Positions 1,171-28,070 of a stretch of DNA of 64,000 bases are shown one piece after another (the stretch's first letter is position 1; every line of letters starts with the position of its first letter). The notes beneath the pieces were generated by a model. The model was not told the DNA's origin. It did no database searches and saw only the letters and a program-made list of their open reading frames with translations. The translations under genes were made by a program, and so were the position numbers. The stretch lies in sequence record MK250017.1. One strand, written 5' to 3'.

Positions 1171-1198
1171 CTATTATTTTTTGATTGTTTATTTTTAT

Positions 1199-4126: not shown

Positions 4127-4165
4127 AAGGGGATCCATGTTACGTTTACATGGATCCCCTTTTTT
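4127..4165 (+). terminator. intrinsic terminator
   Basis: 14-bp perfect stem AAGGGGATCCATGT/ACATGGATCCCCTT followed by T run. Confidence 0.9.
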
Positions 4166-4166
4166 G

Positions 4167-4173
4167 ATAAATA
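4167..4173 (+). promoter_or_regulatory. T4-like late promoter core ATAAATA
   Basis: The same heptamer lies 24-30 nt before the ATG of nine TAG-containing genes. Confidence 0.65.
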
Positions 4174-4197
4174 TAATAAAGAATTTTTATTAAACAT

Positions 4198-5574
4198 ATG
4201 GCTTTATATTTAAACAATGCACAATATGGCTCAAGTAATCAATCTTCTCAAGATACACTAATACATAGTTATAATAAATCTTTTTTTTCAGATTATAATC
4301 ATGCAAAGACGGTGTTATTATAGAAAGTTATGAAACCAGGTGAAGTAACATTTGCTTATTATTATGATTCAGAAGTACCTTATGGATAGAATGTTATTTT
4401 TGCAGTTGGACCATTATCTGATGCAGGCTGTAATACTATATTTAAAAATGCTGATGATATTGACAGTGTAAAAGACGTATTAGATGAAACTATTGCAGAT
4501 ATAAATGCAAGTGTATCTAATATGGAAACTAAAGTTGATGGAATCATTGAAGAATGCAAAACACCTTTATTAACAAAAATAGAAAAAAACATCAATGATA
4601 TAGTTGATATAAAAAGAGATATATCTACAATTAAATCTGATATAGTTAATACTAATGATACATTAACAAGTAAGATTAATCAAGTAAATAATCAATTAAC
4701 TGCATAGATGTCTCAAGATAAAACAAACCTTATTAATAAGATTAATGATACGTCAAATGATATAGTTAAATATATTGATAATACATCTAATGCTATTATT
4801 AATTATATTAATAGATCAGTTTCTCTTGCAGTAGGAAATGTAACTACTGATTATACATAGAAAAATGATGATACATCAATGACATTGGGTAATGCAATTT
4901 CTACATTAAAATTAAATTTAGAATAGTCTATTTCTGATTTATCTGGTAAACATGATGGAGATATTACCGGTTTATAGAGAATAATTGATGAAGCAAAAGG
5001 TAAAGTAACAGAAAATACAACGACATTATCACAGTATATACAATAGAATAATAGTTTTGTAAGAAAGTTAAATACAAGTATTAATAATGTAAATAATGCA
5101 TTAGATGAACGTATTACTAATCTCAGATAGGATTTTGAAACATTGGAAATACCTAAAAAAATTCATGACTTATCAACAAGGATTGCTACTGTAACAACTC
5201 AATCAAATGTAGATCATGAAAAACTTAAGGCTATTGATAATTTAGAAAGTAGATTATCCAAATGTGAAGGTCGATATGAAAAACATTTCGAGATGGATAT
5301 GGTTCAGTTAAATGGAAATATAAAAGATATAAATACATCTATTTCAAATATTATTAAAAGTATTGACAATATTAAGATAAAAACTGGTACCAGTGAAGGA
5401 ACTGTATAGGATAAGTTTGATAATATAAGTAGTCAACTTTTTAATATAAGTGAACGTTTATCAAAGATAGATTCATCTATTAATGCACTTGAAACAAAAT
5501 TTGCTGGAAATGAAACATATCATAATGAATTGTTAAATGAATTATCTTCATATAAAAATTCATTAGATTATTAA
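4198..5574 (+). CDS. fibre paralogue A (code 15, 458 aa): shared N-domain + coiled coil
   Basis: Frame 1 is open from ATG 4198 to TAA 5572 with 9 TAG and no TAA/TGA. It joins track ORFs 4522 and 5143. Contains KPGEVTFAYYYD. Confidence 0.85.
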
Positions 5575-5598
5575 TAAAAATTAAAAATATATTATATT

Positions 5599-8154
5599 AT
5601 GGAATATAAAAGTCCGTTATTAAATTAGATAATTTCTATATTAGACAAACGTTCTGAAGCTGGTGAAAAAAGAATTAAGAAGACAGAAGATTATGTTAAG
5701 AGTTATGATACATCTATTACTCGTCATATAAACAAATAGGTTGAAGAACTTAATACATCTATAAAAACAGCAACAGATAAAGTAATAGGAGATTTAAATA
5801 CAAGTATTAATAATACTGTTGATACCATATCACATGATATTTTGAGTGTTTCAACAAACCTTAAAACCGCCATTGAATAGATTTACTATAATATTAATAC
5901 ATCTATTAATGGCGGTAAAACTGATACATCTATATATCTTATTGGTTTAAAAAATGAATTAGAAAGAAAGATAAATGATGTTGACTAGAAGTATAAAATT
6001 GCTGATAGTTAGTTATCAAGTACGTTAAGTTAGAATATAAAAGATGTATCAACTAAATTAACACAGAAAGTTAATATAATTGATACAAAATATGATACAA
6101 GTATTTCTAACTTATCATAGAAGCATGATAGTTCATTTATATAGGTTACTAATTTAATTTCTAGTTAGGGAACTTCAATTGGTAATAAAATTACAAGAGA
6201 TATTAGTACAGCTAAATAGGAATTAAATTCTAATATATCTACCATATAGAGTAATTTAAATGGTAAAATTGATAATACAAATACTTCTATTAATTTATAG
6301 TTTGATAGAGTTGCTAGAAAATTAGAACATTAGAATACTTCAATAGATGATATATCAATACGCTTAAATACGACGTCAAGAGCAATAGTAAAAGCATTAA
6401 ATACATCAGCTAATGATTTATATAATATTACAGATGATATATCTACAAAATTAAAAAGTACAATAGAAGGTGTAAAAATAGATATAACAGGAAAATATGA
6501 TGCAGAGATTAGAAAGTTAAATACATCTATTAGAAATTTAGATCTTGATACTACTAACTCATTAAGTACATTAAATACATCTGTAACAACATTAGAAACA
6601 AATTAGAAAAAATTAAATACATCATTAGCTAGTTTACGAGAATCATTTGATAAATTAGTTGATACTGAAGATGTTAATGGTGTTATAGATACATTCAGAG
6701 AAGTTGAAGATTTTTTATCTAATATATCAGATGAAAAAACATTAACTGGTATGTTATCTGAGTTAAAAACTGGAATAGATTCACACATTGATGCAAGTAT
6801 TAAAGATATATCAAATGCAATTGATAATGTTAAAGAAGAAATAGGAACAAATATTAATAATAGAGTTAATGCGTTAGAAACAACAATTAATACAACTGTA
6901 AATACAAAACTTACAGAAATTAATTCATCTATTAATGATATTAGTACACGTTTAAAATAGTCAATAACCGATCAATAGACATATGTATCTACAGAAATTG
7001 GTAAAATAAATTCATCAATAAAAGATTTAAATACAACAATTAAATAGAATGTTGATACATCTTTAAAAGCAATTCAATCTAAATTAGATTCATCATTAAA
7101 AACAGTTTCAGATTCATTAACTTCAACAACAAGTAGAGTTGCAAAATTAGAATTAAATAACGTAACTGCTGCAAAGGTAACAACAGGTACAAATACAAAA
7201 TTATGGAATGATACAACTGACAGTATAAATGAAGATTCATATGTTATTAACAAATAGGTATTAACAACTAAAGAAAATAATATTGAAAAAACATATGAAT
7301 AGAAATTAGTAAACAGTAATATTATAAAAGAAATTAATAAATCTGAAAAAGCAGTTGCATCTAATTTATTAACTGTTAATAATAATATTGCTTCTATTAA
7401 TACAAAATTAAGTAATATTAATTCAAGTATTGGTAATATATTAAATTCTTCATATATAAACAAGAAGAATAAGTATACAACAAACGGATTTAGTACAATA
7501 GGTGGTTGTTTAGATTTTATTATTAATGATATGTATTATACTGCACCTGCAGCTGTAAATGTAACATATACAGTAACACCTACATCATTTATTAGAGGTA
7601 AGAATACAAGTGTTACATTTAAATATACAGTTAATAATTATCCTAATAATATATAGAGTATTACATATAATGGTGCTACAAAAACAGAAAGAACATTTAC
7701 AGAAACAATTACAGTAAGTAATTCGGTATCAAGAGCATTATCTGTAGTTTCTAACTATGTTGACAGTAAGGATGCTAGACCAACATCATTTAATAAAACA
7801 TTAACAGTATATGCTAATTTAGAATTATATGTTTGGACATCAACATCAACATCATTTAATAAAGCATATACATCTGCTAATATGCCAGTTGGATATACTA
7901 CATATACATATAATTCTGGTAATTATAGTATAAATGTAAATAATGGTACTGCAGCAAAATATATATTCTTTGTTTCAGATAAGAATTTAGTTGAATCAAA
8001 ATTCTTTGTATATGAACATGGTGGTGCACCAACATTAGGTGGTGGTATTACAAATTTAGGAACAATAACAATATAGAAGTATGATGTTGCATAGACATAT
8101 TACTTATATAGATCTAATAATGTCCTTAATGGTAATTGGGACATTAAATTTTAA
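5599..8154 (+). CDS. fibre-like protein B (code 15, 851 aa): coiled coil + Thr-rich beta (Ig-like) C-terminus
   Basis: Frame 1 is open except for TAG. IDTFREVEDFL at 6685. Joins track ORFs 6751 and 7882. Confidence 0.85.
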
Positions 8155-8156
8155 CA

Positions 8157-8163
8157 ATAAATA
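8157..8163 (+). promoter_or_regulatory. late promoter core ATAAATA
   Basis: About 25 nt before ATG 8189. Confidence 0.6.
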
Positions 8164-8188
8164 ATAAAACTAATTAGTATAATTTTAT

Positions 8189-11100
8189 ATGGCTATAAAA
8201 CTTCCAGATACGCTGAGAACTGCAAATGATACATATGCTATTGCAGTCTCAGAAGAAATAAAAGGTGGTATTCGTGGAGTTTAGACAGTAGAAGATTTGA
8301 GTAGAATAAATAATGCTTTGATTTCTAATGGTATGTTAGTATGGGTAGAAAAATCAAAGAGTTATTACAAATATACAAATGGAACATGGTCTATATTATC
8401 TGCTTCTGCTTCTGGAACTCCATTACTTACAACTGCATAGATAACAGCATTAAAAAATCAAGGAGTTTTACCTGATAATTACATTTGGATACGTTCAAAA
8501 GATGATATTGATTTAGAATAGGAAGGTGTTGTAAATAAAACATATACAACTTCAAAGAATGGTAGTTATGTTGATATATTATTTCAAGCAATAAGATAGT
8601 TACAAACAGAAGTTGCTAAAATGAGAAATACATTTAAATATGGAATGTATTCTTGTACAAATAAAGAAATGGCAGTTTCTAATGTTGTTAATGAAATGGT
8701 TGCAACACCGGCAGAAGAACCTTTATGGGCGATAGAAGAAGATGGATTATCTTATGTGTATGCTGTAGAGTTTAAAGATGGATATAACAAAGAGGACCCT
8801 TCAAAATCTACATTTTCTATAATATCTGAAATTAACGGTTTAATTTAGAATGTTAATGGTACTTACTATGATATTTCTAGTACAGATAAAAGGAAAGTAT
8901 ATTTTACACATAAGAGTTCAGAACCAATTGATGAAGAAGATATAGAAGATATTAATATATTTAAAGACAGTAACGGAAATCTTCCGAACAGTGTAAGTAT
9001 GATGGAAGGTATGAGTGATCCAAAACAATTTATTTATATGACAATAACCAATAAAAAAGACAAAGGAAAGTCTTATTTATTGGATTTCTCTGTACTTATA
9101 GAACCGAAAAGAGACGTGTCCATATCCTTAGACGCGTAGCGTTCTCCAATAGATAATATTAATTTCACAAATTTAATGACTAATTATGTAGAAACTGTTA
9201 ATGTAATGTTATTACTTAATCGTAAAATGGTTAAAGAAACAACAGAAGGTGACAAGAAAACATATACATGGTATGGAAATAATTATTTATATGTATCTAT
9301 TAGTGATTATTATACAAATGATGTAATTATAGAGGGATATTATAATAAGACTGATGGAAAACTTTATAAAAATATATAGGATTTAGGAGATCAATATTAT
9401 TTCAGTAAAGTATATTTTGGTATGTTAAAATTAAATAAATTTAATGTATATTCAAGATATTAGGATTTTACTAAATTTATTGGAGAAACTGATAAAGTTG
9501 TTAAACCTAATATACCTAATGATAGTGATTATAGATATAAGGTTGCACATATTACAATACGTTCTGTTTCAGATGAAGCAGAACTAAGAGAAATAAAACA
9601 ATACCTTCCAAATAATGAATTAATATGGGAAGAAAAAAATAGTGTTTTATGGATAAAATCAAACGATAAAGTAGTACAGATTGGAGGTACTAGTAATTCA
9701 AATAATAATGGAAATCAAAATAATAATAAAGATAGTATGACACAAGAAGAATTAATAAAAGCCCTTAAGGAAATGGGTATTGTTTATGATTCAAATAATG
9801 GATTAGAATTAGAATAGGCAAAAGTTGAGGATATTACTTTTATTAATTCTAATTTAGCTGACAAATATGTTTATTCAATAGATTCAGAAGGTAATTTACA
9901 TTCAACAATTGTTCCTAAAGTTTCACTTGAATCAAGAGTTGCTAATAAAAATTTATATGAAACATCTAAACCAGGATCTACTTTTACACCAAGAGGATTT
10001 GTTGCAAATTTAGTATGTGGTGAAAAAAATGAACAATTAGGAATTGATAATAATTTAAGTGCAAGTACAACAGGTTCAATATTAAATGAATCAGACCGTA
10101 TTCATATATCTTAGTTCTATGCACCATTATCAACAGATATTGCAGAAGGAAAAATAGGATGTTCTCATGCATTCATAGAATTAACTAATACATCTACTTT
10201 TGATTTTTAGTTAGATGGATGTTATTTACATTTCTTCAGTCTTAGTGATACAGGTGTTACAACATATTATAATTTACCATTAAAAGGTGTAATTCCCGCA
10301 GGTAATACTTTCTTAATCAGAGGTAAAAAATATGCAGATTATAAGAATTCAAATGTATTCATAAAAGTAAGTACATTTGATATGGAATGGTTCAGTGAAA
10401 AAAATGAACTTATTGATTTAACTGTAAATACAACATATAATGGATATGCATTAGCATTAACATATGGTAATACTGTTGTTGATAATGGTGTAGAAACAGA
10501 AATTTCACCTGTTACAACATTAGCAAAAATAGATATGGATAACTCTTACAAATATAGAGATAATTATATCGATGGTATTATATATTCATTTAAAGTTGCA
10601 AATATTCCAAATACATATAGAACATGGGCAATATTTAATTCCGGATATAATGTATTATCTAACAGTTTATTCAGAGAAACTTTCTTACTTGATCCTGCTA
10701 AACAAGGATTTTAGGCACTTTGCTCTAATAAGAAGGATTCATCAAGAGCTCGTCATGAGAAGAATACAGACTTTACTTTGTTATCTCTTGCTAATGAGTT
10801 TATTGAATTCCCTAAATCTGATTCAGTAAAAGCAGTTTCCGATTATTCTCCAAGAGCATCATTTGAGCATAAAACAGTTATTACTGAAAAGAGTAATATC
10901 GATTTAAATAAGCCAAATATGATAACTTGTGCATTTGGTATTAATATGTTAACAACACGTTGTTTCAACTGGATTTCTGGAGGTATTTTTGATGAATTTA
11001 TTTGGGTTAGAAAGAAAGGAAGTAATACAGCATGGAAAGATTGTGCAAGATATGAATCATATACAAGTTCAAAATGTAGTGTTGTAACTGAGCGTTCTAC

Positions 11101-12892
11101 AAGTGAAATTACAAAGAAAACATTTAATGAAAGTGAAACAGCATAGAAAGAAGCAAAAACATATATTTATGACAGAATAACAGGAATATTCCCTGGTACA
11201 ACAACACAATATACTGCGCATAAAGTTATTATTAATTTACCAACACCTTCATCTGGTACATCAGAATATGAATATTGTGTAGGTCGTGCTTTACTTGATG
11301 GAAGTCCTGATCCTGCACACAGTAATGTAAATGAACTTTATACATTTACTATGTATTCATCAGCATATGTTCCACGTATTTATCAGACATCAGACCAATA
11401 GGGATTCCATTGGATTGAATATCAGGTTTGGGCAGGTGCTGCTAAAAAGTTAAATGAATATATTGATTCTACAAAGGGAACACAATATATGCCTGTATTA
11501 GTAAATACTGGTGATATGACACAATCTGGTTCCCGTATTTCAGAATGGTTTGATTATTATGAAGCTGGTAAATGTTTATTCAATCATCTTGAATAGATGA
11601 ATGTTGTCGGTAATAATGACTTGGCTAATATAGATCCTACATTATTAGGAAATGGTGATGACTCTGGTAAATCTAATTCATTCTATTTCCATGTATTCTA
11701 TTGTTATGAAGTAGATAATTTTGGTAATACTGCATATCCTATAGTTAATAAGAAATATATTCCATCTTTATATTATTTCGGAACAAATGATTACAGATTT
11801 ATTATGATTAATTCTGAAATTACTACTAAATGTTGTAGTGACTGGTTCGGTATTAGTAATTATAATATATACACTGGTTATACTATTGGTTCAACTGGTA
11901 ATACGTATAAAACAGATAATACATGGACACCAATTTATGATAGATTATTTGCAATCATGAATAGCTTTACTGGTAAACAATTTATTACTGCAGTTCATGA
12001 AATGCCATTTACTGTTATTACTAAGGCAAATATTAAGTATGATACAAAAATAATTGCTGCACAACGTAGTGCATCTGGTACATCATTAGTTGGTTCTCAC
12101 ATGAATTCAATAACAGCTGAAGATACTGGATATGGATTTAACTGGTTCTCACGTTTACTTGAATATTTTGCAAGTAAAAGTAAAACTAAGTTATGTATTG
12201 GTGGTCATAAACATACATATGCTATGACATTCCCTATTAGAGAAAATTATACATATACAAATAATGGTGTATCTGTAGATTCAAAGACAACTCCAATGCC
12301 TATGTCTGCTACACTTAATAACGCAATTGAAAAATCTGTAAAATGGACAAAGAAATATACATATAATGCTGAAACATGTACATTTACAGAAAGTACTTCT
12401 GGTACAAATGTTGTAAATACAAGTAAATTACCATATATACCAACAGATGTAAAATCTATGACATATAAAGGTTCTACAAGTATTGCACAGGCAGCAAAAG
12501 CAGCAAATGGTTTCTTACCATATCAGTATTTAAATACATTGAATACAACAAATGCAATTACATATTTAATGTGTCAGGCAACTGGTTATAAGTATTCATC
12601 AAATAAGGAATTACCTGCATACACACAGGCATTCTCTGAACTTATACCACAGACAACAGAAGCTGAAAAACCTGCAAATACATAGAAATTCCCAATGTTT
12701 ATAGATATTGTATTGAATAATACAACTATTTCTTATAAATTAATAAGTGTTGCTAATGTATTTGATAGTGCATATTTATTTACACCACTTACATATGGAA
12801 AAGCAGATAGTGAATTAAAATATATGAAGATCAATGCCGGAACTTTATATGGAAGTTGGCAATCAAATTCAACGAATTTAAAAACACTTTAA
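8189..12892 (+). CDS. 1567-aa (code 15) protein: fibre-type N-terminus, lamin-tail-like domain, FN3-like domain and calcineurin-like/purple-acid metallophosphoesterase
   Basis: Frame 2 is open except for TAG. Motifs SHAFIELTN..GVIPAGNTFLIRG (LTD-like), TSDQ[TAG]GF, NTGDMTQ, VGNND, VHEMPF and GGHKH. Confidence 0.85.
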
Positions 12893-12919
12893 TAAAAATT
12901 ATTACTCTAATATAATAAT

Positions 12920-15900
12920 ATGAAATATAATGGAACTGATAATATTATAACTGATAATGATATTCTTGTTACTTCCGGAAGTGGAAGTAACAAGGATCTT
13001 CATACAGTTATTGAAGAACAACAATATGATATTGACACCTTGAAATCTAACGTTAAGTGGATTTATAAGTATGGTGGTGTTGGAAGCGGCTCTGGTGGTT
13101 CAGGAAGTGGATCTGGTTCCAGTGGTAAATGGTCATTTGATGTAAATATTAATGACATACCATTGAATATCAATTCAACAATGGATTTATCAAAGAACTT
13201 GGTTGGTGATATAGCTCCTGTTACAGTATCAGTAACAATTAAGAATCCTTCTGTAGGTGGTTATCAATTTAAATTGCAATATGGTTATGACGATGGATTA
13301 TTTTAGACATATCCAACATTCTTAAATACAGAGAATTCATGTTCTGCAACATTTAACCTTAAAATTTCTAAGAACTCACAATTAGTTATAAAGGTTACAG
13401 ATATTGATAATAATTATAAGCAATCTACTTTTAAATACTTTATTTATGGTCTCGATTATTCATTAACACCAATGACATATAATAATAGCGGTAATTTATA
13501 TGAACTTAAAGATACTGACTATAAACCTAGTTTATTTCCACAAGGTGTTATTTATAGATTAAAGATTAATAACTTTGGTGGATTCCAAATTAATTATAAC
13601 GTAACTAATACAATAAGTTATAAAATTATATCTATTAATGAACAGGATTATACAAAATATAATACTGATAAAAATGCAGGTTCATACTATGATGCAACAG
13701 ATAACAGTGGATATTTATCAAATAGTGATACTACTATAACATTAGATTATTTAATCACTAATACTACATTAAAAGATGAACTTAACTTTGGTTCTCAAAC
13801 ATTTATTGCGAATATCAATAACTTAAATAATGGTTAGATTATACATAATGAAGTATTATAGGAATACTCAATTGTACCAGATACTAATCAATATGTTATT
13901 TGTTTGACGGAATCTATTAATGGTAAAGTTTATACAGATAAAACCGGAATTACTACAGAAGATGCAGAAGCTAACGCTTTTTATGCAGGTGATTATATTT
14001 CATTTAAATTAAGACCATTTAACTTCGCATCTGATAGTATTACAATTAACTATACTTTAATTAATGAAGATAATGGTATTAATACATCAAGTACTATTAA
14101 CTTAAAAGCAGGACGCTATACATCTCAAACGTTTAACATATATACCGGTTGGAATAAATTAATACTTAATAATGATATTGTAAAATACTATTATGGTAAA
14201 AAAGTATCTGCAGATGTAAAATGGTATAATAGAGATGGTAATGATAACTCTAAATATAATGATGTTGATGTATCATATGTACGTTTTTATGATAGTATAT
14301 CTGAAAACATGAAAAATGATCCATATTTTAAATAGTTATATGTTAATAATTATTTAGAGTTAACAAGAGATATAAATGCAGCAGATAAAGTTATAGATTT
14401 ATATAAGAATAAAACTATTAATATTAACAATTTAAATGATACCCATTTTGCATTTGGTATACAATTATCTGCATCTAATGATACAAATGATGTATTGTTT
14501 GAATTAAAAGATAATGCTCATGATACATTATTTTAGATAACATAGAGTTCTATTATATGTAATAAATTCACAAAAGATAATGATATTAAAGTTTATATTC
14601 CAAAGGAAAATAATTATGTACCATCAGATTTAAGTAAATATCACTTAGTAGATATTCATATTAAAAAACTTGAACCATATACATTAACAAAAACAGTAAA
14701 TAACACTTCCTCTGTTGATATGCAATATTATTTAAATGATTTAAAAGATGATATTGATGTTAATACATCAACAAAAGGAAAACAATATGTTATTGAAGTA
14801 TATATTGATGGTATTACAGAAGGTGTAACTAACTAGTATGTTGTAACATTCCCAAATATTTAGTATATATATTTAAAAAATGTAAATGTTTCATATACTT
14901 TATTTGAACTTGGTAAATTTAAAAATAATAAATTTAGTTTTAACGACATTGATGCATGTATATATTACTATACATATAAATATGTAATAACTAAAGGTAC
15001 AGGAGTATCTGAAAAAAATATTAGTTTAATATCACAATTATCAACATTAGACTATAATGCAACTGAAAATAAAAATGATTTAGCGAAATAGCTTGTATTA
15101 CGAAAGCATAATCAATTATGTTTATCTAAAGACTATGTAAGCTATTTGAAAGCATACTTATAGATACCTATATATATAATTAATGTTGCACATACTCGTG
15201 AAAATGATAATACTGTTTCTATTTTCCAGTGGTTAAATGCAACATATAAAGAAACAGATAATATTGAATCATGGCCAATACAAACAACTAGTGTTAATGG
15301 AAAACATAAAACTGGTATTACATATGTTGCACCAGATATGAAAGATGGTGTTGAAATAGAATTCCCAGATGATGATGCATATACACAGGCATTATTTAAA
15401 TTAGATATTCAGGGTTCATCAACACGAGAAAACCATGGTAAAAACTTAGATTTGAGTTTAGTAAATAAAGATACTGTTACAAATACAAAGTTATTATATT
15501 CACCAAACTTTAATGAAAATGATAGTGATACATATTTACCAGAATCCAAATTTACATTAAAAGCCGATATTGTCGACTCTGGACACTCTAATAATACTGT
15601 AATGGGTAAATTCATTAATAAAAATACATAGAAGTTTAATACAGGTTCAGAAGGTCAATATAAGAATTATATTAAAAACTGTCTTGAAGGCTTCCCATGT
15701 GTTGTTATATTAAATGTAGACTATGAAATTGCTGGTTCAACATCAGAATATTATTTCTTAGGTATATATAATTTCAACTTAGGTCGTGGTTCATATTCTA
15801 ACTTAGGATATGTAAATAATTCTATATTTAACGCAAAATTGGAATCTGTTTCAAACAATAAACCTTTCTTATTCTTTAAAACTACTACAGATGAATATGA

Positions 15901-18900
15901 GTTAAGAACTGATTTTGGTTGTGCCGAAATTACAGGTAATGACCCTAAATTTGATTTCTCTCAATGGGATGATACTATATTATATCCATTTGAAAATGAG
16001 TCTGGTAACTCATATATGTGGGATGATATTGTTACAAGTCAGGAAGGTGCATTTAAACTTGCATTGAAATATTTTGTAAGAGATATTGCTATTACAGGTG
16101 GTTATATATTTGATTATTTAGGTAAAGGAGCAATAGACCATGAGACATGGGATCAGAACAAATGGGGTTATATCGGATGTGTACCAGATGTTAGTAGACA
16201 ATATAGTAGAAATTCATAGGATCTTAATCATGCATCATATAATCCAAATATTAAAGTACCTGATAAAGGTCCTAAATGGGAACAAATTTTCCAACGTACA
16301 ATGTAGGATGGTTATGAATATAATGGTAATACATCATATTCTAGATTAGATTATACATCTGCTGTTGAATATTATACTATTTGTATGGCGTTCGGTTTGG
16401 TTGACTCTGTATAGAAAAACTTAAACGTAAAAACATGGACATTAAATAAAAAGAATCTTAAAGAAACAGATCCGGATGAAAAAGAATTAACACGTTCTAA
16501 ATTCTATGTTTCATTCTATGATATGGATACATGTTTAGGTATTAATAATAACTCAAAGGATACTACAACATTCTGTTTTTCTGATTATTGGCAATCATCT
16601 GAAACTGAATAGAATGATATACATGTACTTACATCTATTAATTAGTATAGAGACTATTTTACAAATATTGATCCTATTACAGGTAAGGAAAATGGTGAAA
16701 TTGGTTATGATATACCTTCTTCATTCTTATTTGGTGTTGCTAAGTATGGAACAGAAGTATTCAATACTGATGAACAATTAAGTTTGGATTATTTGGAATA
16801 CCCAACACCTACATTATTATGGATACGATATAGAGCTAGTAATACAGCAGCATATGATAAACCTGGTACAGGTTCATTACAAAGTGCTGAGTATTTTATG
16901 AATACTTATTATAAAAAACACTTGGAAGGTGTTAATGAACTGGTATTTAATTTAAATTATAAGGCAAAATATCTTGTATATAATATATAGGAGGATTGGA
17001 CATTTGATCCTAATAATAAAGATAAATTTATTGGCACATATACTATTAGTAATAAATCTGAATACGACAGTAAATTCCATGGTGATATAGAAAAATTCAG
17101 AGGTAGATCAATATATCGTGTATATGATTGGTTAAATTCACGATTACATATATTGGATGCATATTTCAATTTATATGATGGATATGAACTTTTATCTGTA
17201 ACTGATGTAGAAAAAGAACATCAGCTAGTTAAAAATGAGAATAATATGTAGCTTGTACAATTACGATTAACAGATCCAAGAGTTAATGTTTTAGCAAAAT
17301 TATTAAATTCTGCTAAAGATATAAACATTAAAGATCAGATCTTTAAATCTGGTGGTGATAGTGATCCAAAAATTGATTTCCCTACAACACCAATTACACT
17401 TCAAGTTAAAGCATAGAATTATTCACCTATTATGTTTGATGTTGGTGGTACAATTAAAGCTAAATATTTGTTGAGATCTTCTGCTAATACGTATTAGATA
17501 ACATTTAGTGGTTCTGGTAATATCGCATTTGCATTATACGGTTCTAATTAGATAACATATATGAGTAATATTACATGGTATACACCTACAAGTATGATAA
17601 TTAAATCAGATAACCTTACAACTATATATGGTAATAATCCAAACTATAATGTCGCTATTTCAAAAATAGAATCACCTGCATTGCAAAGTATTGATTTAAC
17701 AGGATCTAGATATTCAGGTTCATTATCATTAACAGAATCAAGTAAATATGTAAACTTATCAACAATTAATATATCAAATTCATAGATAAACTTAACTGCT
17801 ACTGAAATTAATGTACAGTCAATTAATGTAACAAATGTATATGCTACAAACTGTGATATATCAAAATGTAGTAAATTAAAAACATTAAAATTAAATGGTT
17901 TAACATTATCTAACCAACTTACATTAACTGTTAATTATGCAAGTAATGTTTTATTTAATGAAATTGAAACAAAATATTTTACAGTAACAAGTTCTGTTGT
18001 AAACCAAAATAATACATTAGTTATTGATGGTTCAAAAAATAAATTCCAGACACTTAAGGAATTAACAATATCTGGTTTTGCAAAAGTAAAAATTTTCAAT
18101 TGTCCAAAATTAGAGAGAATTAATATTTCCGAAATTATTTCTGGTGATGCTACAAAAGATATATATTTAACTGAATTAGCAGTAATTAATTGTAGTACGG
18201 ATAAAACTGTTACAACATTTACAGTAAAATCAAATACATAGAAAACAATAGATTTACATTCGTTCAGTAAATTAGCTCGCGTATGTTTTTATGGTACATA
18301 GAATTTTGAATAGGTTATTTTACCAGAAACATTGGGATTATATGGAAGTGAATTTGGTAATTGTAAATCATTGAAATATGTAGATATTCATACAAATGCA
18401 GGTTCAAAAGCAAGTAAAATTATAATAAAAGGATACAGTCAATATAGATTATATTGTAATGAAAAGAGTTCGAGTGACGTCGGATTTAATACATATCTCG
18501 TACCAAATGTAGGATGTTTTTATAATTGTTATGAATTTAAAATGGAGCGATCTATTAATGATAATTCTATAACACCTATAAGAGTTGATTCTTCAGTAAC
18601 TTCATTAACCTGGTTATTTGGACTTGATGCTAAACATAAAAATATAGACTTAACTAAAATTGCTAATTTTATAGATAATATTCCAGATAATAATAATATA
18701 ACAGATATTAGTTATTTCTGTATGTTATAGACTGGTATTCAATTAACAAAAGAATAGTTTATAGCTGACGGACCAGATAAAGCAACATTACATTTAGGAA
18801 AGTTTGCAAGATGTAACAGCATAACTAGTGCATTCTATTGTGATAATATTTACATTAATAGATGGATTTGGTACAACAGTTCAAAATCACAAGTATTTAA

Positions 18901-21526
18901 ATCACCAACAATTAAATGGTTATTTGGACTCAACAAATCACTGAATATCTACATGACAATTGATTGTTTATATCCGATTATAAATAAAATTGAAGGTTTA
19001 TTTGTATATGCAGAATATATATGTGAAATTAGTCCTATATATTCGGGAAAGTCTTAGACATTTAATATATATACAATTCTTACTGAATAGAAAAAGAAAG
19101 AAGCTGCATGGGTAAATAGAGATACTTATACAAAACAATATACATTTAATGGTACAATAGGTGAAATAATAGAAAATACACCAGTTCCTGCACGTGCATT
19201 GTTTGTATAGGAAAATACAACAAGTCATACAGTTGATGCAGAAGATAATAAAAATGCCATTTATCCAATATCCATGACTAAATTTGAGGCAATAACATTA
19301 AATAAAGGGGTTATATGGAATTTATATGGATTATTTAGTAAAAAATGGAATCTTAGTGTTATTGATTATTTCCAACATAATAAAGAATTCACTAATCCTA
19401 TAGAATATGAAGATTTATTTAATACTGCATTTATACCAGAAAAATTAATTAATATTGGTTCAAGTTTAAACACTTCATTCCCTACATCTGTTGATTATGA
19501 TAGATTTTTAGATTTCAAAAAATTAATTGATAATTATGATGATGCTGCTCCATTGTATGCATTGTTTAATAGACGTAATGGAGATGATACGACTAACGCT
19601 GCTGGATTAGCTTTTACAAAACATATTTCATCAGATCTATTTAAAGAATGGATGGTAAAAATATTTAAAGCTAGTAATTCACACGGTGTTATTAATTTAT
19701 TTAGAAATTGTAATATATTTGTTAGTGAAGCAGAAGCAAAAAATAATTGTAATTTTAGTGTTAAAAATATATTTGAAAGTTGTGGTGAACCAGAAGAAAT
19801 AATAAACACAAAAATTCATAATATATTTAGTTTATTCAATAATATGCATGCATATGTAAAAGGAGCAGAAATAAAGGACACAAATATACAATATATGAAA
19901 TTTGGTACCGATTTATTTACATATCTTCCTAATATAACTGTGGTTGCATATGCATTTTATAATAATTATTGGTATAATGCTATACCATTTAATATGTTTA
20001 ATAAACGATATAAATGTGATGATGATTATGTTTATTTGGAAGTAAATCAAGATGGTAAAATAGCAACAGAAGCTGATACAAAAAAAATACGTAAACGTAT
20101 AAAATATGTAGCATATGATTATAAATAGGATATAAGTTATATTTCTTGTTGCTTCTCAAATTTACATTTTGATCCACTCACCACATCAAATAGATATAAT
20201 ACAAATAGTGATATTATTAAAGAAGCAGGTATAAATTATTACCAATTTGTAAATGAAGATAATTCTGTTATAAATGAAGATGAAAAGTTCTACTTATCTG
20301 AACCTATTACAGTTAAATTAGAAAAAACTGGTGCAGCTAGTAAAACCATTCATCCATCATATGAATATATAGATACATTAAATCTAAATGGAGTATTTTA
20401 TGAAGGTGACTTTAAAAAAGCAGGAACAGCAGATGGTATTGTAACAAATAGCACATCAGGAGTACAACGAATGAATAATATCATGTCAGAATCAATGTCT
20501 AATTATACAAATAGTCTTATTGTTGCACCTGATTTATTGTATGGTTGTACAAGTTCATGTACAATGACGGATTTCTTATCATAGACGAACGTTAATACAA
20601 ATATGTTATGTGGTATTTTACCTAAACATTTTTATAAGAACATAAAAACATTAAGTAACGGAACATATGCAGTATTTACCAATTGCATTGTAATACCAAA
20701 TTATATAGGTACATATGTAGATTATAATTCAGATGGAACAAGTAAATTACGTTACAACGTATATTCATTTATTCCTGAAGAATTTACAACATCTGATATG
20801 ACTAATTTATAGGATATGTTTAGATTCAAAATACATTGGCCAAAACAGGGTCAAATGGAATATGGTTGTCAAACATATGATTTCTATGTATTATCAACTT
20901 GTAAATCATTTGATTCTAATATTACATCATTAGAAAATGCATTCCCTGTAAGTTTAATTAATAATATGTAGTCATATAATAATGTTCCAATTGATTATAA
21001 TACATCAAATAGATCAATTCACTTTAATTTACAATGTACATATTTAGAAGAAGATTACACAGAAAATAAGAAATCAGAGATATTTGGTAATTTGAATTAT
21101 AATAATTTAAAATATTTAAAAACATTCAGTACTGGTTTAAATATGGAAATATTTACAAAATTAAATGTAAGTAATTTAATAAATCATATTAATATATTAT
21201 ATGGTTATTTTGGAAATATATTTAATCAATCATACAGTGTATCAAATATGATATTAACTGAAAATAAATATTGTATTTCATTAGTTGCTAATTCAGTATA
21301 TCAGGCACATTAGTTATCTTGTAATATAGTATTCCCTATATGCAGTAATACTAGTGAAATAACAAAACGATTATTAAATTTTACAAATATACCAGCAGGT
21401 GCGAAATTTAATACATTAATTGATATGTTTGTTTCAGAAACTAATAGATCATTCTATGAAAATATGTATGATTCATTCTTCGTATTTACAAATCAAACAA
21501 GACCTCAATATTCAACATTTGAATAA
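12920..21526 (+). CDS. 2868-aa (code 15) CotH-kinase-family protein with C-terminal LRR-like repeats
   Basis: Frame 2 is open except for TAG and joins 11 track ORFs. Motifs IQGSST..HGKN, TLKADIVDSGHSNN, LGIYNFN, DSV[TAG]KN, FYDMDTCLG, WLNSRLHILD. LRR-like LxxLxL repeats from about 17600. Confidence 0.82.
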
Positions 21527-21532
21527 TACAAT

Positions 21533-21573
21533 GAAGAGAGATACAACTGAGATTTGTATCTCTCTTCTTTTTT
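21533..21573 (+). terminator. intrinsic terminator
   Basis: GAAGAGAGATACAA/TTGTATCTCTCTTC followed by T6. Confidence 0.9.
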
Positions 21574-21574
21574 A

Positions 21575-21581
21575 ATAAATA
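21575..21581 (+). promoter_or_regulatory. late promoter core ATAAATA
   Basis: ATAAATATAAAAAG 24 nt before ATG 21606. Confidence 0.7.
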
Positions 21582-21605
21582 TAAAAAGAATTTTAATGAA
21601 TATAA

Positions 21606-24600
21606 ATGGATAAGAAATGTTCTCAACTCATTATAGGTCAATCAATAATTCATAGTTTTAACCCTAAACCGTTTAAAAATATGGATACTGCTATTTATGC
21701 TCTTAATAACAAAGAATTAAGAGCTGGAGAAATTGCTATAGCATATTATAATGACCCTACTGAAACAAGAGGAATTGGAGCTATTGTAGCAACGGGTAAT
21801 ATTCTACCTGGAGGAAATCAAATATTCAAGAATACAGCATATACAGATAAACTTATAAAAAACGTTAAAGAATTAATCGAATCTAATTCAGTTGATATAA
21901 GTGTAATAGAAGAAAACGTAAATAATAATATTGCAGATATTGCTGTTTTAAAAACATAGTTAAAAAAATTAACAGCAGATACAAATAATAATAATTCTTC
22001 AATAGATGATAAATTAAAAGAAATCAATATCATTATTGATAATATGAAAAAGGATGTTTCAAATATTATCGATAATATTAATAAAATTGTTGCTGATGCT
22101 TCAAAATCTATTGTTGATACAGCAGCTTCTGTTTCCAAAGATTATTTAGCAGCAGATACTTCATTAAAAAACTATGTTGATAATGAAAACATAAAAATTA
22201 ATCAAAAAATTGATAATATTTCATCAAATTTTGATACAAAAGTCGAGGAAATTAGTACCAAAATAAATTCCAATACAAGTATACTTGAAAATACAATAAA
22301 TAATAATTCATCATTAATTTATAATGATATTTCAAAGTTAGATGATAAAGTAAATTCTTATAATACAAGTTTAAATACATCTTTAGCATTTAATGTTTCT
22401 ACACTTAATTCTCGTATCGATGATAATAAAAATTATGTTGATATACGTGAATCTCTTATTAGAAAATATGTTGATTCTAAAGATGATCAAATAAACTGGA
22501 ATATTAATGATACATCAAAACATATTCATTATCGTATTGATGAAGAAGTTCATAAACTTAATGATAGAATAACGCAGGAACATATTGATATGAATAGAGT
22601 TATTGCTGATAATAAAACAGAAGCAAAGCGCTATGCAGATCAAATGTTAACAGAAGCAAAATCATATACAGATGAAGTAGAAGAATATACTAAAGCTTCT
22701 ATTAAACAAGCAGAACTTGATTCAAAGAAATATACAGATGATGAAATATCAAATTTAGATAATGAATTATCAGAATCTATTCATAATACAAGTTTATATG
22801 CAAAAGAATGTTATGATGATGTAAAAAAACATCTTAAATTACAAAATGCTTCATTAATTACATATGTAAATGATGAAATCAGAATGTGTGATGAGCGTGT
22901 TACTGATAGAGTAAATAGCGTTAAAACATTAGTAGATTCTACAAAAACTCAGTTGAATACGTCTATTAATAAAGTATATGAAAATGCATTAAAATATACT
23001 AATGACACTAAGAGTGAGATATTAAAACATATATTAATTAATGATATTAAAGTAAGAGAAGATTTTGCAAAAGCTGATGCTGCATTAGATAAAAAAATTG
23101 ATGATACTTCTAAATTATTAGGTGATTATGTTGATAATACGTCAAATGCTATTGTTGACCATATTAAAGATACATCAAAGTTAATATGGAATTATGTTGA
23201 TAATACATCTAATGATATTGTTTCATATATTAATAATACATCTAATGATATTGTAAAATATATTGATAATACATCTGATGCTATTGTTGCATATATAGAT
23301 AAACAAGATAATGCATAGAAAGATTATACAGATGCAAAGAAAACAGAAATAATTAATTTTGTTGAAGACCTTTCTAATAATTTTAAAACTTATATTGATA
23401 CCAGAGATAATGCAACATTAAGTGATGCAAAGATTTATACAAATGGAGAAATTCAAAAAGTTAATAATACAATAACAACACTTGATGAAAAAGTAGAAGA
23501 TTATAATAGAAATACACATGAATTAATTACAAATGTTTCAAATGGAATTATCAATGATTATAAAACAGAAATTAAAAATATAATTGATGATGTTTCAAGA
23601 AATGATACATGGTTATATAATCATATTGAGAAATATAATACAGATCTTTCTGGTAAAATTGATACTAATAATCAAACAGTAACAAAATTACTCAATGATG
23701 TTTCTGATGGACTTTATCAAAAAATTGAGGATACTTCAGATTATTTGGAAGGCGTTATTACTGCATTAGAAACAAAACATAATGATGAAGTAAAGATAAC
23801 AAATACTTCTATTATGAATTTTGTTAATTCTTATAATTCAAGTACTGCTACTGCTATTAATGCTCTTAATACAAGTATTAATGATTATTGGAAAAATATA
23901 ACAGATACAATTAATACAAATTTAGGAAATGTAAGTACAGGTGTTTTAGGAAAGATTAATACTATATAGAAAGATTTATCTACATATATTTAGACAGCTG
24001 AAAGCACATTAAATTCATTATATAAAAATGCAGATTCCAGTCTTCTTGGATATATAAATGATCAAGATACAAAACTTCAAAATAATATTGATGATATTTC
24101 TACAAAGATTGTTAATAAGTTTAATACTAAATGTGAAGAATTAAGTAATTTAATTAACACTACCACAACTAATTTAAATTCATCAATTAATAGTGTTCAT
24201 GATACATTATTCCAGAAAATAGAAAATACATCTACAGAAATTGTTGATGCATTAAATACATCAATATCTAATATTAATATTAAATTAGGTTAGGATAAAT
24301 CAGAATTAATAGGAAAAATTGATGATATTTCCACAAAGATTGTTAATGCGTTAAATGTTTCAATTAATGATATTAATAAGTTGCTTAAACAGAAAGATGT
24401 AGAGTTAGATAACAAGATTGATACTACATATACCAAAATTATTGGAGAGATGAATGCATCTGATGGTATTTTAAATAAACGTATAACCGATCTTGAAACA
24501 AAACATGTTAATGAATTAAAGCAAAAAGAAAAAGATCTTACAACATTAATTACTAACACAAAAACAGAATTATCTGATCAACATACAAGAGATAGAGATG

Positions 24601-26262: not shown

Positions 26263-26275
26263 TTATTGTTTTTAG

Positions 26276-26282
26276 ATAAATA
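26276..26282 (+). promoter_or_regulatory. late promoter core ATAAATA
   Basis: 24 nt before ATG 26307. Confidence 0.7.
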
Positions 26283-26306
26283 TAAAAAATATAGATTTTA
26301 ATATAT

Positions 26307-28031: not shown

Positions 28032-28035
28032 AATA

Positions 28036-28042
28036 ATAAATA
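28036..28042 (+). promoter_or_regulatory. late promoter core ATAAATA
   Basis: ATAAATATAAAAAG 28 nt before ATG 28071. Confidence 0.7.
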
Positions 28043-28070
28043 TAAAAAGAAATTTTAAACAAATATAAAC

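What the first reader, a model, noticed from the sequence alone, without database searches (positions are those of the whole stretch)
8189..21526. Adjacent giant late proteins carry a metallophosphatase and a CotH-type kinase
Seen: a 27-nt-spaced gene pair under one late promoter and one terminator. The first has a fibre-like N-terminus, an LTD-like domain, an FN3-like domain and all five calcineurin-like motifs in variant form (DxQ, GD, GNND, H, GHxH). The second has CotH-family motifs (KN, DxxxKN, YDMD) followed by about 1300 aa of LRR-like solenoid. Known: CotH is an atypical extracellular protein kinase, and purple-acid phosphatases share this FN3-plus-catalytic layout. Inference: an opposing writer/eraser pair displayed on or delivered by the virion, possibly modifying surface phosphates, receptors or other virion proteins. 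It is invisible under code 11.
Basis: partly seen in the sequence, partly recalled or inferred. Interest (0 to 1): 0.68.

Follow-up and report, generated by a model that had tools for sequence, protein, structure and literature searches.

The report
Paired phosphatase and CotH-kinase phage fibre genes
Two adjacent giant late genes of the Prevotella megaphage Lak-A1 carry a purple-acid-phosphatase-like domain and a CotH-type kinase domain, and the same gene pair sits side by side in more than a hundred other gut phages including crAss-like phages, where it has been annotated but never studied.

Summary
The window is Prevotella phage Lak-A1, which is published as using TAG=Gln. Under code 15 the two ORFs are real: 8189-12892 (1567 aa) and 12920-21526 (2868 aa), 27 nt apart.

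**Domain calls.**
- Both domain calls hold up.
- An AlphaFold model of gene 1's C-terminal part matches plant purple acid phosphatases over both domains (VIA Z 21.8).
- The central part of gene 2 matches Bacillus CotH kinase (Z 18.0; next hit 8.9).
- Every proposed catalytic residue is invariant across about 70 distinct loci at 24-99% identity.

**Co-conservation.**
- The pair is almost always found together, in fixed order and spacing: 70 of 71 phosphatase-seeded loci and 56 of 57 CotH-seeded loci.
- It occurs in phage contigs of 92-554 kb.

**Prior knowledge.** crAss-like phages cr7_1 and crAss002 already carry GenBank labels "phosphatase" plus "CotH kinase/internalin". The Lak copy is therefore a new member of a known but unstudied kind.

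- The transcription unit probably starts two genes upstream, at a motif at 4166.
- The 1300-aa LRR solenoid is only partly supported.

**Function.** Most likely these are virion fibre proteins with variable binding regions around conserved enzymatic cores. A writer/eraser relationship on one substrate is untested.

The parts
4127..4179 (+). Hairpin terminator of the preceding unit (4127-4161), followed by the motif GATAAATATAATAA (4166-4179), a candidate late promoter for the four-gene unit that contains the pair
   Evidence: Terminator scan. The motif has five exact copies in the window, each just upstream of the start of a TAG-containing gene. Allowing one mismatch there are 15 matches against 6.7 expected, and 0 of 100 shuffles reach 15.
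4198..8154 (+). Two coiled-coil genes (4198-5574, 458 aa; 5599-8154, 851 aa) upstream of the pair, with no terminator in between; probably co-transcribed with it
   Evidence: Code-15 ORFs. Pfam gives only helical-repeat hits. No + strand terminator lies between 4161 and 21533.
8189..12892 (+). Gene 1 (P0001, 1567 aa, 16 TAG=Q): fibre-like N-terminal half, LTD-like domain, FN3-like sandwich, metallophosphoesterase
   Evidence: It is 39% identical over about 1180 aa to cr7_1 gp20 'phosphatase' and 30% identical to crAss002 gp19.
10100..10372 (+). LTD-like (lamin tail domain) beta-sandwich, aa 638-728
   Evidence: Pfam PF00932, E 0.0024, 18.6 bits, below the cut-off. Equivalent sub-threshold hits occur in homologues.
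10880..11356 (+). FN3-like beta-sandwich, aa about 898-1056, equivalent to the N-terminal domain of plant purple acid phosphatases
   Evidence: Model pLDDT 89.6. The VIA alignment to 6ofd_A starts at model residue 19 and covers 393 of 426 residues.
11357..12889 (+). Binuclear metallophosphoesterase domain with motifs SDQQG (11390-11404), GDMTQ (11510-11524), GNND (11609-11620), H1270 (11996-11998) and GHKH (12203-12214)
   Evidence: Foldseek E 3.5e-12 to purple acid phytase/phosphatase. VIA Z 21.8. The motif residues are invariant in 72 distinct loci. Homologues pass the Pfam Metallophos cut-off.
12893..12919 (+). 27-nt spacer between the two genes
   Evidence: Sequence.
12920..21526 (+). Gene 2 (P0002, 2868 aa, 35 TAG=Q): conserved N-terminus with a Gly/Ser linker (aa 1-70), variable beta-rich region, CotH core, LRR-like stretch and a long variable C-terminal region
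   Evidence: There are 286 cluster representatives, nearly all giants of 2400-4000 aa.
15287..17209 (+). CotH-type atypical kinase core, aa 790-1430. It holds the catalytic loop DSVQKN (16403-16420), YDMD (16517-16528), and the N-lobe residues K841/N842 and K881/D883
   Evidence: Model pLDDT 79.6. Foldseek top hit 5jd9, probability 0.95. VIA 5jda_A Z 18.0 with 330 of 359 residues aligned; the next hit is 8.9. Motif residues are invariant in 65-68 loci. Pfam CotH is sub-threshold in 2 of 16 homologue fragments.
17597..18469 (+). LRR-like stretch, aa about 1560-1850
   Evidence: It aligns to the part of crAss002 gp20 that holds a Pfam LRR_4 hit of 27.5 bits against a cut-off of 27. P0002 itself has no Pfam LRR hit.
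21533..21567 (+). Intrinsic terminator hairpin (14-bp stem followed by a T run) that closes the unit

Best explanation
The two genes are one conserved, phage-restricted module. They are expressed late, within a four-gene unit running from about 4166 to 21567.

**What each gene encodes.** Each encodes a giant fibre-like protein built around an enzymatic core.
- Gene 1 ends in a purple-acid-phosphatase-like two-domain metallophosphoesterase. It sits behind an LTD-like sandwich and a long N-terminal shaft.
- Gene 2 carries a CotH-type kinase core. It lies between a variable beta-rich N-terminal region and an LRR-like plus long variable C-terminal region.

**Most likely function.** Both proteins are probably mounted on the virion as host-surface-interacting appendages.
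- The variable flanks would do the binding and set specificity.
- The conserved cores would act on phosphate-bearing structures.
- The phosphoesterase would hydrolyse phosphomono- or phosphodiester groups of envelope glycans or lipids.
- The CotH domain would transfer phosphate from ATP, either onto virion or fibre proteins while still in the ATP-rich cell or onto surface targets.

**Shown here:** the ORFs and genetic code, both folds, invariant active-site residues, strict pairing, restriction to phages, and the pattern of conserved cores with variable flanks.

**Inferred:** virion location, catalytic activity, the substrates, and any functional coupling between the two enzymes.
For: - Identity and code.
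- Phosphoesterase fold: model pLDDT 89.6, pTM 0.92. Purple acid phosphatases and phytases are top by Foldseek (E 1e-11 to 1e-12) and by VIA (Z 21.8, rmsd 3.4, 393/426; then GpdQ 17.0 and PhoD 15.1).
- CotH fold: model pLDDT 79.6. 5jda_A scores Z 18.0 against 8.9 for the next hit, and every following hit is an atypical kinase.
- Kinase-like order of elements in the model: helix, then D1162...N1167, then a strand, then a strand, then D1201-M-D1203. The family consensus spacing from D to DMD is 23 residues, equal to the D228-D251 spacing of B. subtilis CotH. Both of those residues abolish activity when mutated (PMC7821199).
- Active-site invariance over 65-72 distinct loci at 24-99% identity. Gln1112 is Tyr in 2 loci, which is the purple-acid-phosphatase ligand.
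- Pairing: 70/71 and 56/57 loci, same strand, 2.0-3.3 kb apart. Divergences of the two genes correlate, rho 0.84.
- Phage-restricted: among 185,579 species genomes there are only 10 loci. All are in metagenome bins or fragmentary draft assemblies and none is on a finished chromosome; several sit on phage-sized contigs.
- Tail context in crAss-like phages.
- Within the Lak lineage the two cores are conserved islands (61-99%), while the flanks of P0002 fall to 30-60%.
- Fibre-type N-terminal motif: Pfam Collagen_trimer is above its cut-off in homologue P0097.
- RNA-library contigs from animal guts cover parts of gene 1, and one spans the junction between the genes. This is weak evidence.
Against: - There is no direct evidence that either protein is in a virion. 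PHROGs gives no tail-fibre family for either.
- The neighbouring Lak genes are unannotatable coiled-coil giants, not recognisable baseplate or tail genes.
- P0001 and P0002 themselves miss the Pfam Metallophos and CotH models. The best CotH score among homologues is 19.5 bits against a cut-off of 23.8.
- The phosphoesterase has Asn for the motif III histidine and Gln for the motif I His / motif II Tyr ligand. From my own knowledge, substitutions at the motif III histidine strongly reduce rate in lambda phosphatase, calcineurin and Mre11.
- A kinase outside the cell has little ATP available.
- Residue-level superposition on 5JDA or 1KBP could not be done, because model coordinates are not exposed.
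Confidence: 0.55

Rival explanations
1. Writer/eraser pair. The CotH kinase and the phosphatase act in opposition on the same substrate, either a host surface receptor or a virion protein, and so set a reversible phosphorylation state.
For: Both active sites are conserved. The genes are almost never found apart, and they diverge in step.
Against: Both genes lie in one transcription unit and are made at the same time, so opposing action on one substrate would be futile without separation in space. Purple-acid-phosphatase-like, GpdQ-like and PhoD-like enzymes are mostly broad phosphomono- or diesterases rather than protein phosphatases. No substrate is known. Tight gene linkage is equally expected for two subunits of one fibre.
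Confidence: 0.15
2. Assembly enzymes inside the cell. As in spore-coat assembly, the CotH domain phosphorylates structural proteins, for example the neighbouring Ser/Thr-rich coiled-coil giants, in the infected cell before lysis. The enzymes need not act on the host surface at all.
For: CotH patterns the Bacillus spore coat by polyphosphorylating coat proteins (PMC7821199). ATP is available only inside the cell. The pair is embedded among five paralogous coiled-coil giants with 14-24% Ser+Thr.
Against: The pair also occurs in crAss-like phages of about 92-105 kb. Whether those carry the Lak coiled-coil giants was not tested, and the two annotated crAss loci list none. Sizes of 1567 and 2868 aa, with variable flanks and an LRR-like region, fit binding proteins better than soluble enzymes.
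Confidence: 0.15
3. Catalytically inert adhesin modules. The two folds are kept as binding scaffolds, as CotH proteins of Mucorales act as host-cell-binding invasins (my own knowledge), and have no enzymatic role.
For: The phosphoesterase motifs are non-canonical (DxQ, GNND). Neither protein reaches the Pfam family thresholds.
Against: Every metal-ligand and catalytic-loop position is invariant across 65-72 loci down to 24% identity, while the surrounding sequence has diverged. That pattern is what selection on an active site produces.
Confidence: 0.1

Closest known systems
crAss-like phage gene pairs: cr7_1 gp20/gp21 'phosphatase' + gp22 'spore coat protein-like (CotH kinase/internalin)', and crAss002 gp19 'phosphatase' + gp20 'transferase/internalin LRR'. 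The unannotated pair gp82 + gp83 of Bacteroides phage SJC03 belongs with them.
   Same: Same two genes in the same order and orientation, with the same domain layout. Identity to cr7_1 is 37-39%, and to crAss002 and SJC03 23-30%. cr7_1 also uses TAG=Q.
   Different: The Lak proteins are longer: 1567 aa against 1117-1174 for gene 1, and 2868 aa against 2497-2657 for gene 2. They sit in a 540-kb megaphage among coiled-coil giants rather than in a podovirus tail module. The Lak GenBank records carry no annotation. None of these proteins has been studied experimentally in the literature I could search.
Plant purple acid phosphatases and phytases (kidney bean PAP 6ofd/1kbp, wheat PAPhy 6git)
   Same: Two-domain layout of an FN3-like sandwich followed by a binuclear metallophosphoesterase. 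VIA Z 21.8 and 18.9 over both domains. The motif pattern is of the DxG / GDxx[Y] / GN.. / H / GHxH type, and Tyr occupies the ligand position in 2 homologous loci.
   Different: Gln replaces the Fe(III)-binding Tyr, so the protein would not be 'purple'. Asn replaces the motif III His. There are large insertions and a C-terminal extension. The domain is fused behind about 900 aa of fibre and LTD-like sequence. Sequence identity is only 10-15%.
Bacillus CotH spore-coat kinase (5JD9/5JDA; Pfam PF08757)
   Same: Atypical kinase fold: Z 18.0 with 330 of 359 residues aligned. The pattern of catalytic Asp, +5 Asn and metal-binding Asp is conserved, with the same 23-residue spacing in the family consensus.
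   Different: The core is about 640 aa with insertions, against about 360 aa. It is embedded in a protein of nearly 2900 aa. It scores below the Pfam threshold. The substrate is unknown and the context is not sporulation.
Phosphodiesterase activities on phage tail appendages of Gram-positive phages: teichoic-acid-degrading phi29 gp12 and GDPD domains in staphylococcal phage tail proteins (from my own knowledge, not tested here)
   Same: They share the idea of a virion-borne enzyme that cuts phosphodiester-linked surface polymers during adsorption.
   Different: The folds differ (beta-helix or GDPD, not calcineurin-like), the hosts differ, and none has a paired kinase.

Membership tests
Calcineurin-like metallophosphoesterase superfamily (Pfam PF00149) | Beta-sandwich phosphoesterase fold with the motifs at the strand ends | tested here: met
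   VIA Z 21.8 to 6ofd_A, with 39 chains at Z >= 8, nearly all of them metallophosphoesterases. Foldseek E 3.5e-12. All five motifs follow beta-strands in the model.
Calcineurin-like metallophosphoesterase superfamily (Pfam PF00149) | Canonical motifs DxH / GDxxDR / GNH[DE] / H / GHxH | tested here: inconclusive
   D, GD, GN-D, H and GHxH are present and invariant. The motif I His is Gln and the motif III His is Asn in all 72 loci. Six of the seven ligand positions are standard.
Calcineurin-like metallophosphoesterase superfamily (Pfam PF00149) | Score above the Pfam gathering cut-off of 21.5 bits | tested here: inconclusive
   P0001 has no hit at E <= 1. Homologues pass: crAss002 gp19 30.3 bits, SJC03 gp82 32.6, P0033 25.5, P0045 25.1, P0097 23.1, P0018 22.2. 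Homology of P0001 to these is E 3e-83 or better.
Purple acid phosphatase (narrow sense) | Tyr ligand of Fe(III) in GDxxY | tested here: not met
   Gln1112 (or TAG=Q) occupies the position in 70 of 72 loci; Tyr appears in only 2. The protein is PAP-like in architecture but is not a true PAP.
Purple acid phosphatase (narrow sense) | N-terminal FN3-like domain followed by the catalytic domain | tested here: met
   Alignments to 6ofd_A, 6git_A and 3zk4_A span model residues 1-19 through 688 and cover both domains.
CotH kinase family (Pfam PF08757) | CotH-type atypical protein-kinase-like fold | tested here: met
   5jda_A Z 18.0, rmsd 4.0, 330/359 aligned; the next hit is 8.9. Foldseek top hit 5jd9, probability 0.95, E 0.057.
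CotH kinase family (Pfam PF08757) | Catalytic Asp and metal-binding Asp (D228 and D251 of B. subtilis CotH) | tested here: inconclusive
   The candidates D1162 (with N1167 at +5) and D1201 are invariant in 65-66 loci. They sit in the expected loops of the model, and the family consensus has the same 23-residue spacing. A residue-by-residue superposition could not be obtained.
CotH kinase family (Pfam PF08757) | Score above the Pfam gathering cut-off of 23.8 bits | tested here: not met
   P0002 has no hit. The best homologue fragment, P0227, scores 19.5 bits at E 7.6e-4. The PF08757 search of the nearest Lak record found nothing.
CotH kinase / metallophosphoesterase | Enzymatic activity (phosphotransfer; metal-dependent hydrolysis) | not testable with these tools
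   This needs recombinant domains and assays.
Leucine-rich repeat proteins | Tandem LRR units recognised by a profile | tested here: not met
   No Pfam LRR hit in P0002 or in three close giants. The canonical core pattern is not enriched. Only the homologue crAss002 gp20 just passes LRR_4, at 27.5 bits against a cut-off of 27.
Lamin tail domain (PF00932) | Score above the cut-off of 34.3 bits | tested here: not met
   18.6 bits in P0001 and 21-27 bits in homologues, always at the equivalent position. 'LTD-like' is the most that can be said.
Phage tail fibre / tail spike | Presence in the virion, attached to the tail | not testable with these tools
   The evidence is indirect only: tail-region context in crAss-like phages, no PHROGs tail-fibre hit, and an analogous CotH-bearing giant seen in a VLP metaproteome whose orthology is unverified.

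The most novel reading that the evidence does not exclude
Many of the most abundant gut phages, from crAss-like podoviruses to Lak megaphages, may carry on their fibres a coupled phospho-transfer system: a CotH kinase plus a Gln/Asn-variant purple-acid-type phosphoesterase. It would rewrite phosphate groups on the Bacteroidales or Prevotella envelope, or on the virion itself, as part of adsorption or host-range control. The module would be exchanged horizontally between unrelated phage lineages that share hosts.
Probability: 0.15. Interest if true: 0.8.

Novelty: new member of a known kind. Interest (0 to 1): 0.5.

Why it matters
- The pair is one of the few recognisable enzymatic features in the structural region of Lak megaphages.
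- The same module occurs in very abundant crAss-like phages. One 90%-identity cluster of the CotH giant has 8,556 member sequences.
- If the proteins are fibres, the module marks the host-recognition apparatus. It also links Lak phages to crAss-like phages: the cr7_1 pair is 37-39% identical, and two related 101-kb contigs are binned with Segatella copri.
- Extracellular or virion-borne CotH kinases are unstudied, and cultured carriers exist (crAss002, SJC03, DAC16-23). The question can therefore be tested directly.
- The family supplies an internal check of TAG=Gln. Invariant active-site glutamines are TAG codons in 6-14 loci.

Tried and rejected
**Searches that found nothing**
- Direct Pfam, PHROGs and PDB sequence searches of both proteins gave nothing useful.
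- Profile searches of PDB sequences with alignments A1 and A3, and phmmer with P0227, gave no CotH or phosphatase hit. No residue-level alignment to a solved structure was therefore obtained.
- The PF08757 search of the nearest Lak record found nothing, and the window's own assembly is not held.
- Both the profile search and the phmmer search of 1.84 billion representatives returned only phage giants and their fragments, no canonical short CotH proteins.

**LRR claim**
- A canonical LRR pattern scan showed no enrichment.

**Virion evidence**
- Peptides of the CotH-bearing structural protein in PMC9523058 were not found in my homologue set, so that proteomic evidence cannot be transferred.

**Literature**
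- Searches found no study of this pair.
- The crAss002 paper does not mention gp19 or gp20.

I did not resend or trim it.
- Complex prediction was not used, because it takes code-11 proteins and no contact surface could be proposed.

**Weak similarity**
- The P0001 N-terminus aligns only weakly (17-23%) to the shared N-terminal domain of the coiled-coil neighbours, so no common anchor is claimed.

Full report
**Identity and genetic code**

The stretch 8189-21526 is 100% identical to four records of Prevotella phage Lak-A1. It is 77-79% identical at the DNA level to Lak-A2 and Lak-B1 to B9. None of these records carries annotation.

Lak phages are published as reading TAG as glutamine. They encode a CTA suppressor tRNA and release factor 2, and their TAG-rich regions hold the structural genes (PMC6784885). 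Using code 15 is therefore justified by the genome itself.

Under code 11 the region breaks into ORFs of 110-362 aa. Under code 15 it gives two ORFs separated by 27 nt:
- 8189-12892 (P0001, 1567 aa, 16 TAG)
- 12920-21526 (P0002, 2868 aa, 35 TAG)

**Transcription unit**

On the + strand between 3900 and 22500 there are only two terminator-like hairpins, at 4127-4161 and 21533-21567.

No recurring motif precedes 8189 or 12920. The 14-mer RATAAATATAAWAA occurs exactly at 4166, 21574, 26275 and 28035 on the + strand and at 43087 on the - strand. Each of the four + strand copies lies 18-22 nt before the ATG of a TAG-containing gene, and the three downstream of gene 2 directly follow a hairpin. Allowing one mismatch there are 15 matches against 6.7 expected, and none of 100 shuffles reaches 15.

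The pair is therefore more likely the distal half of a four-gene late unit, 4198-21526, that begins with two coiled-coil genes. This is inference from sequence.

RNA-library contigs from animal gut samples cover parts of gene 1, and one spans 12681-13098. Contigs cannot prove a single transcript, and DNA carry-over is possible.

**Gene 1: the phosphoesterase**

Direct Pfam, PHROGs and PDB sequence searches of P0001 gave only a weak LTD hit, at aa 638-728, 18.6 bits against a cut-off of 34.3.

Homologues are abundant. At least 1278 proteins have E <= 0.001, most of them 1400-1600 aa long. Several pass the Pfam Metallophos cut-off of 21.5 bits:
- crAss002 gp19, 30.3 bits
- SJC03 gp82, 32.6 bits
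- four metagenomic homologues, 22-25.5 bits

An AlphaFold2 model of aa 880-1567, built on 77 sequences, reached pLDDT 89.6 and pTM 0.92.
- Foldseek ranks purple acid phytases and phosphatases first (E 3.5e-12 to 4e-10, probability 1.0), then PhoD.
- VIA-align against 48,161 chains gives kidney bean purple acid phosphatase at Z 21.8 (rmsd 3.4, 393 of 426 residues, both domains).
- Below it come wheat phytase 18.9, GpdQ 17.0, pig PAP 16.5, Rv0805 16.3 and PhoD 15.1.

The five motifs are SDQQG (1068-1072), GDMTQ (1108-1112), GNND (1141-1144), H1270 and GHKH (1339-1342). Each sits at the end of a beta-strand.

Across 72 distinct IMG/VR loci at 24-99% identity, conservation is as follows:
- D1069, G1072, G1108, D1109 and the G-N-N-D motif are invariant.
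- H1270 is His in 71 of 72 loci.
- GHKH is conserved in all 70 loci where it is covered.
- The three glutamines are either Gln or a TAG codon (14, 6 and 8 loci). This is an independent check of TAG=Gln.
- Q1112 is Tyr in two loci, which is exactly the Fe(III) ligand of purple acid phosphatases.

The domain is therefore PAP-like in architecture. It is not a true PAP, because Tyr is replaced by Gln. It also lacks the motif III histidine.

Whether it is active, and on what substrate, cannot be told from sequence. Invariance of all ligand positions argues for a working metal site.

**Gene 2: the CotH core**

Sequence searches of P0002 gave nothing.

tblastn of aa 701-1500 against annotated phages found several relatives:
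- cr7_1 and cr124_1, at 37% identity and E 5e-103, annotated 'spore coat protein-like; similar to spore coat protein/internalin/CotH kinase'
- crAss002 gp20
- IAS virus
- several other crAss-like phages
- the B. thetaiotaomicron phages SJC03 and DAC16-23

phmmer against 1.84 billion cluster representatives found 286 hits. Nearly all are giants of 2400-4000 aa with the match at about residues 750-1400.

A model of aa 790-1430, built on 35 sequences, reached pLDDT 79.6 and pTM 0.86.
- Foldseek's only credible hits are B. cereus CotH 5jd9 and 5jda (probability 0.95 and 0.92, E 0.057). The next hit has probability 0.02.
- VIA-align gives 5jda_A at Z 18.0 (rmsd 4.0, 330 of 359 residues). CtkA follows at 8.9, then PI4K2A, HipA and Fam20, all atypical kinases.
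- Two of 16 homologue fragments give sub-threshold Pfam CotH hits, the best at 19.5 bits against a cut-off of 23.8.

K841, K881 and D883 are invariant in 68 loci, and N842 in 67 of 68. D1162, K1166, N1167, D1201, D1203 and N1210 are conserved in all 65-66 loci where the site is covered.

In the model the order of elements is helix, then D1162...N1167, then a strand, then a strand, then D1201-M-D1203. This is the catalytic-loop and metal-binding-loop order of protein kinases, which I state from my own knowledge of PKA numbering.

The family consensus spacing from the catalytic Asp to the first Asp of DMD is 23 residues. That equals the D228-D251 spacing of B. subtilis CotH, where D228Q and D251A abolish activity (PMC7821199). 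Lak-A1 has a 16-residue insertion there.

I could not obtain a residue-level superposition, so this equivalence is a strong inference and not a demonstration.

**LRR claim**

P0002 and three close giants have no Pfam LRR hit. A canonical LRR core pattern is not enriched: 4 seen against 4.4 expected.

BLASTP aligns P0002 aa 831-1737 to crAss002 gp20 aa 792-1621. That stretch overlaps the region where gp20 just passes LRR_4, at 27.5 bits against a cut-off of 27. By eye, aa ~1560-1850 read as irregular LRRs.

The remaining ~1000 C-terminal residues are untested. I did not resend it.

**Co-conservation**

| Seed | Loci tested | With the partner gene | Notes |
|---|---|---|---|
| Phosphoesterase (IMG/VR) | 71 with at least 4.5 kb downstream | 70 | CotH core on the same strand, 2.0-3.3 kb after the match. 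The remaining locus has two copies. |
| CotH core (IMG/VR) | 57 with at least 5 kb upstream | 56 | Exception is L134, a 3526-aa giant in standard code. |

- The two seed sets largely overlap, so these are not independent counts.
- Divergence of the two genes from the Lak-A1 copies is correlated: Spearman 0.84, or 0.80 without the Lak-like loci. Shared ancestry contributes to this figure.
- Carrier contigs range from 92 kb (crAss-like) through 140-410 kb to 554 kb.
- Among one genome for each of 185,579 prokaryote species only 10 loci were found. All are in metagenome bins or fragmentary draft assemblies and none is on a finished chromosome; several sit on phage-sized contigs, including two 101-kb contigs binned as Segatella copri.
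- The module is therefore phage-restricted and moves between, or is retained by, very different phage lineages.

**What it probably is**

In cr7_1 and crAss002 the pair lies in the structural and tail region. A Crassvirales review lists phosphatase domains among tail-spike annotations (PMC10136315).

Homologues of gene 1 carry an N-terminal motif that passes Pfam Collagen_trimer, at 28.2 bits against a cut-off of 23.8. P0001 has the matching stretch at aa 47-67.

Within the Lak lineage (A2, B2, B3) the pattern is as follows:
- The phosphoesterase domain is 74-99% identical.
- The CotH core is 48-84% identical.
- P0002 flanks fall to 30-60%.
- P0001 aa 200-300 fall to 28-65%.

Conserved enzymatic islands inside variable binding regions is the pattern expected of host-interaction fibres.

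A CotH-bearing giant of another code-15 phage was detected with 21 peptides in a particle-enriched faecal metaproteome (PMC9523058, supplement 5). Its peptides are absent from my homologue set, so orthology is unverified.

I therefore favour virion fibre proteins with enzymatic cores, at confidence 0.55 for the whole picture. The rivals and their confidences are:
- the writer/eraser relation, 0.15
- a spore-coat-like role inside the cell during assembly, 0.15
- inert adhesin scaffolds, 0.1

**Novelty**

The domain content of this pair was already written into the GenBank records of crAss-like phages. Benler et al. note that CotH kinase domains in phages 'are currently unstudied' (PMC8008677).

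New here are:
- the Lak copies
- the near-obligate pairing across more than 100 loci
- the PAP-type architecture with an invariant Gln/Asn-variant site
- the conserved kinase catalytic residues

This makes the Lak pair a new member of a known, uncharacterised kind.

**Limits**

- Read laying was given 5301 letters.
- Steps not done:
  - models of the remaining domains
  - complex prediction, because the tool takes code-11 proteins

Noticed in passing
window 4166-4179, 21574-21587, 26275-26288, 28035-28048 (+); 43087-43100 (-): The exact motif RATAAATATAAWAA lies just upstream of the start of TAG-containing genes (18-22 nt before the ATG for the four + strand copies). The three copies downstream of gene 2 directly follow a hairpin terminator. 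It is a candidate Lak late promoter or regulatory element.
   Followed up: partly
window 4198-5574, 5599-8154, 21606-26219, 26307-27971, 28071-36167 (+): Five giant coiled-coil proteins flank the pair and are paralogous by BLASTP. Four of them share an N-terminal domain (LLPGE..FAYY.D....GIN.I.AVG). Pfam and PHROGs see only helical-repeat or tape-measure-like similarity. With the pair they form a 32-kb block of seven large late genes.
   Followed up: partly
window 26307-26480 (+): The 554-aa coiled-coil protein begins with a Pro/His/Cys-rich stretch that looks like a metal-binding or low-complexity segment.
   Followed up: no
window 58723-59856 (-): A transposase-like gene (phrog_506, E 2e-121) carries 17 in-frame TAG codons. 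A mobile-element gene has therefore been recoded to the phage's late code.
   Followed up: no
window 43160-49324 (-): A 2054-aa ORF with 27 TAG codons has no PHROGs match. It is another unexplained giant late protein.
   Followed up: no
IMG/VR loci L004-L140, at the columns of P0001 Q1070, Q1071 and Q1112: The invariant active-site glutamines of the phosphoesterase are TAG codons in 14, 6 and 8 other loci. This is independent comparative support for TAG=Gln in these phages.
   Followed up: yes
L001 1780-5133 and 5344-5940 (cr7_1, NC_055895): The cr7_1 'phosphatase' is annotated as two CDS (gp20 and gp21) with a 210-nt gap, although tblastn sees the domain as continuous. This may be a frameshift, an assembly error or a mis-annotation.
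   Followed up: no
L036 / L102 / L103 (IMGVR_UViG_3300031994_000435, 28 kb): One contig carries two copies of the CotH giant, one on each side of the phosphoesterase gene.
   Followed up: no
L134 7247-17827 (IMGVR_UViG_3300031994_000006, 208 kb): This is the only CotH-giant locus without a phosphoesterase neighbour within 10 kb. The protein is 3526 aa, is read in the standard code, and has an opposite-strand gene upstream.
   Followed up: partly
L142, L145 (JAJWOH010000001.1, JAJXAL010000002.1): Two crAss-sized 101-kb contigs carrying the pair (44% identity to Lak-A1) are binned as Segatella copri MAGs. This hints at the same host genus as the Lak phages.
   Followed up: no
window 168-248 and 1097-1171 (+): tRNA-Cys(GCA) and tRNA-Met(CAT) genes are present. 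No suppressor tRNA lies in this window.
   Followed up: no
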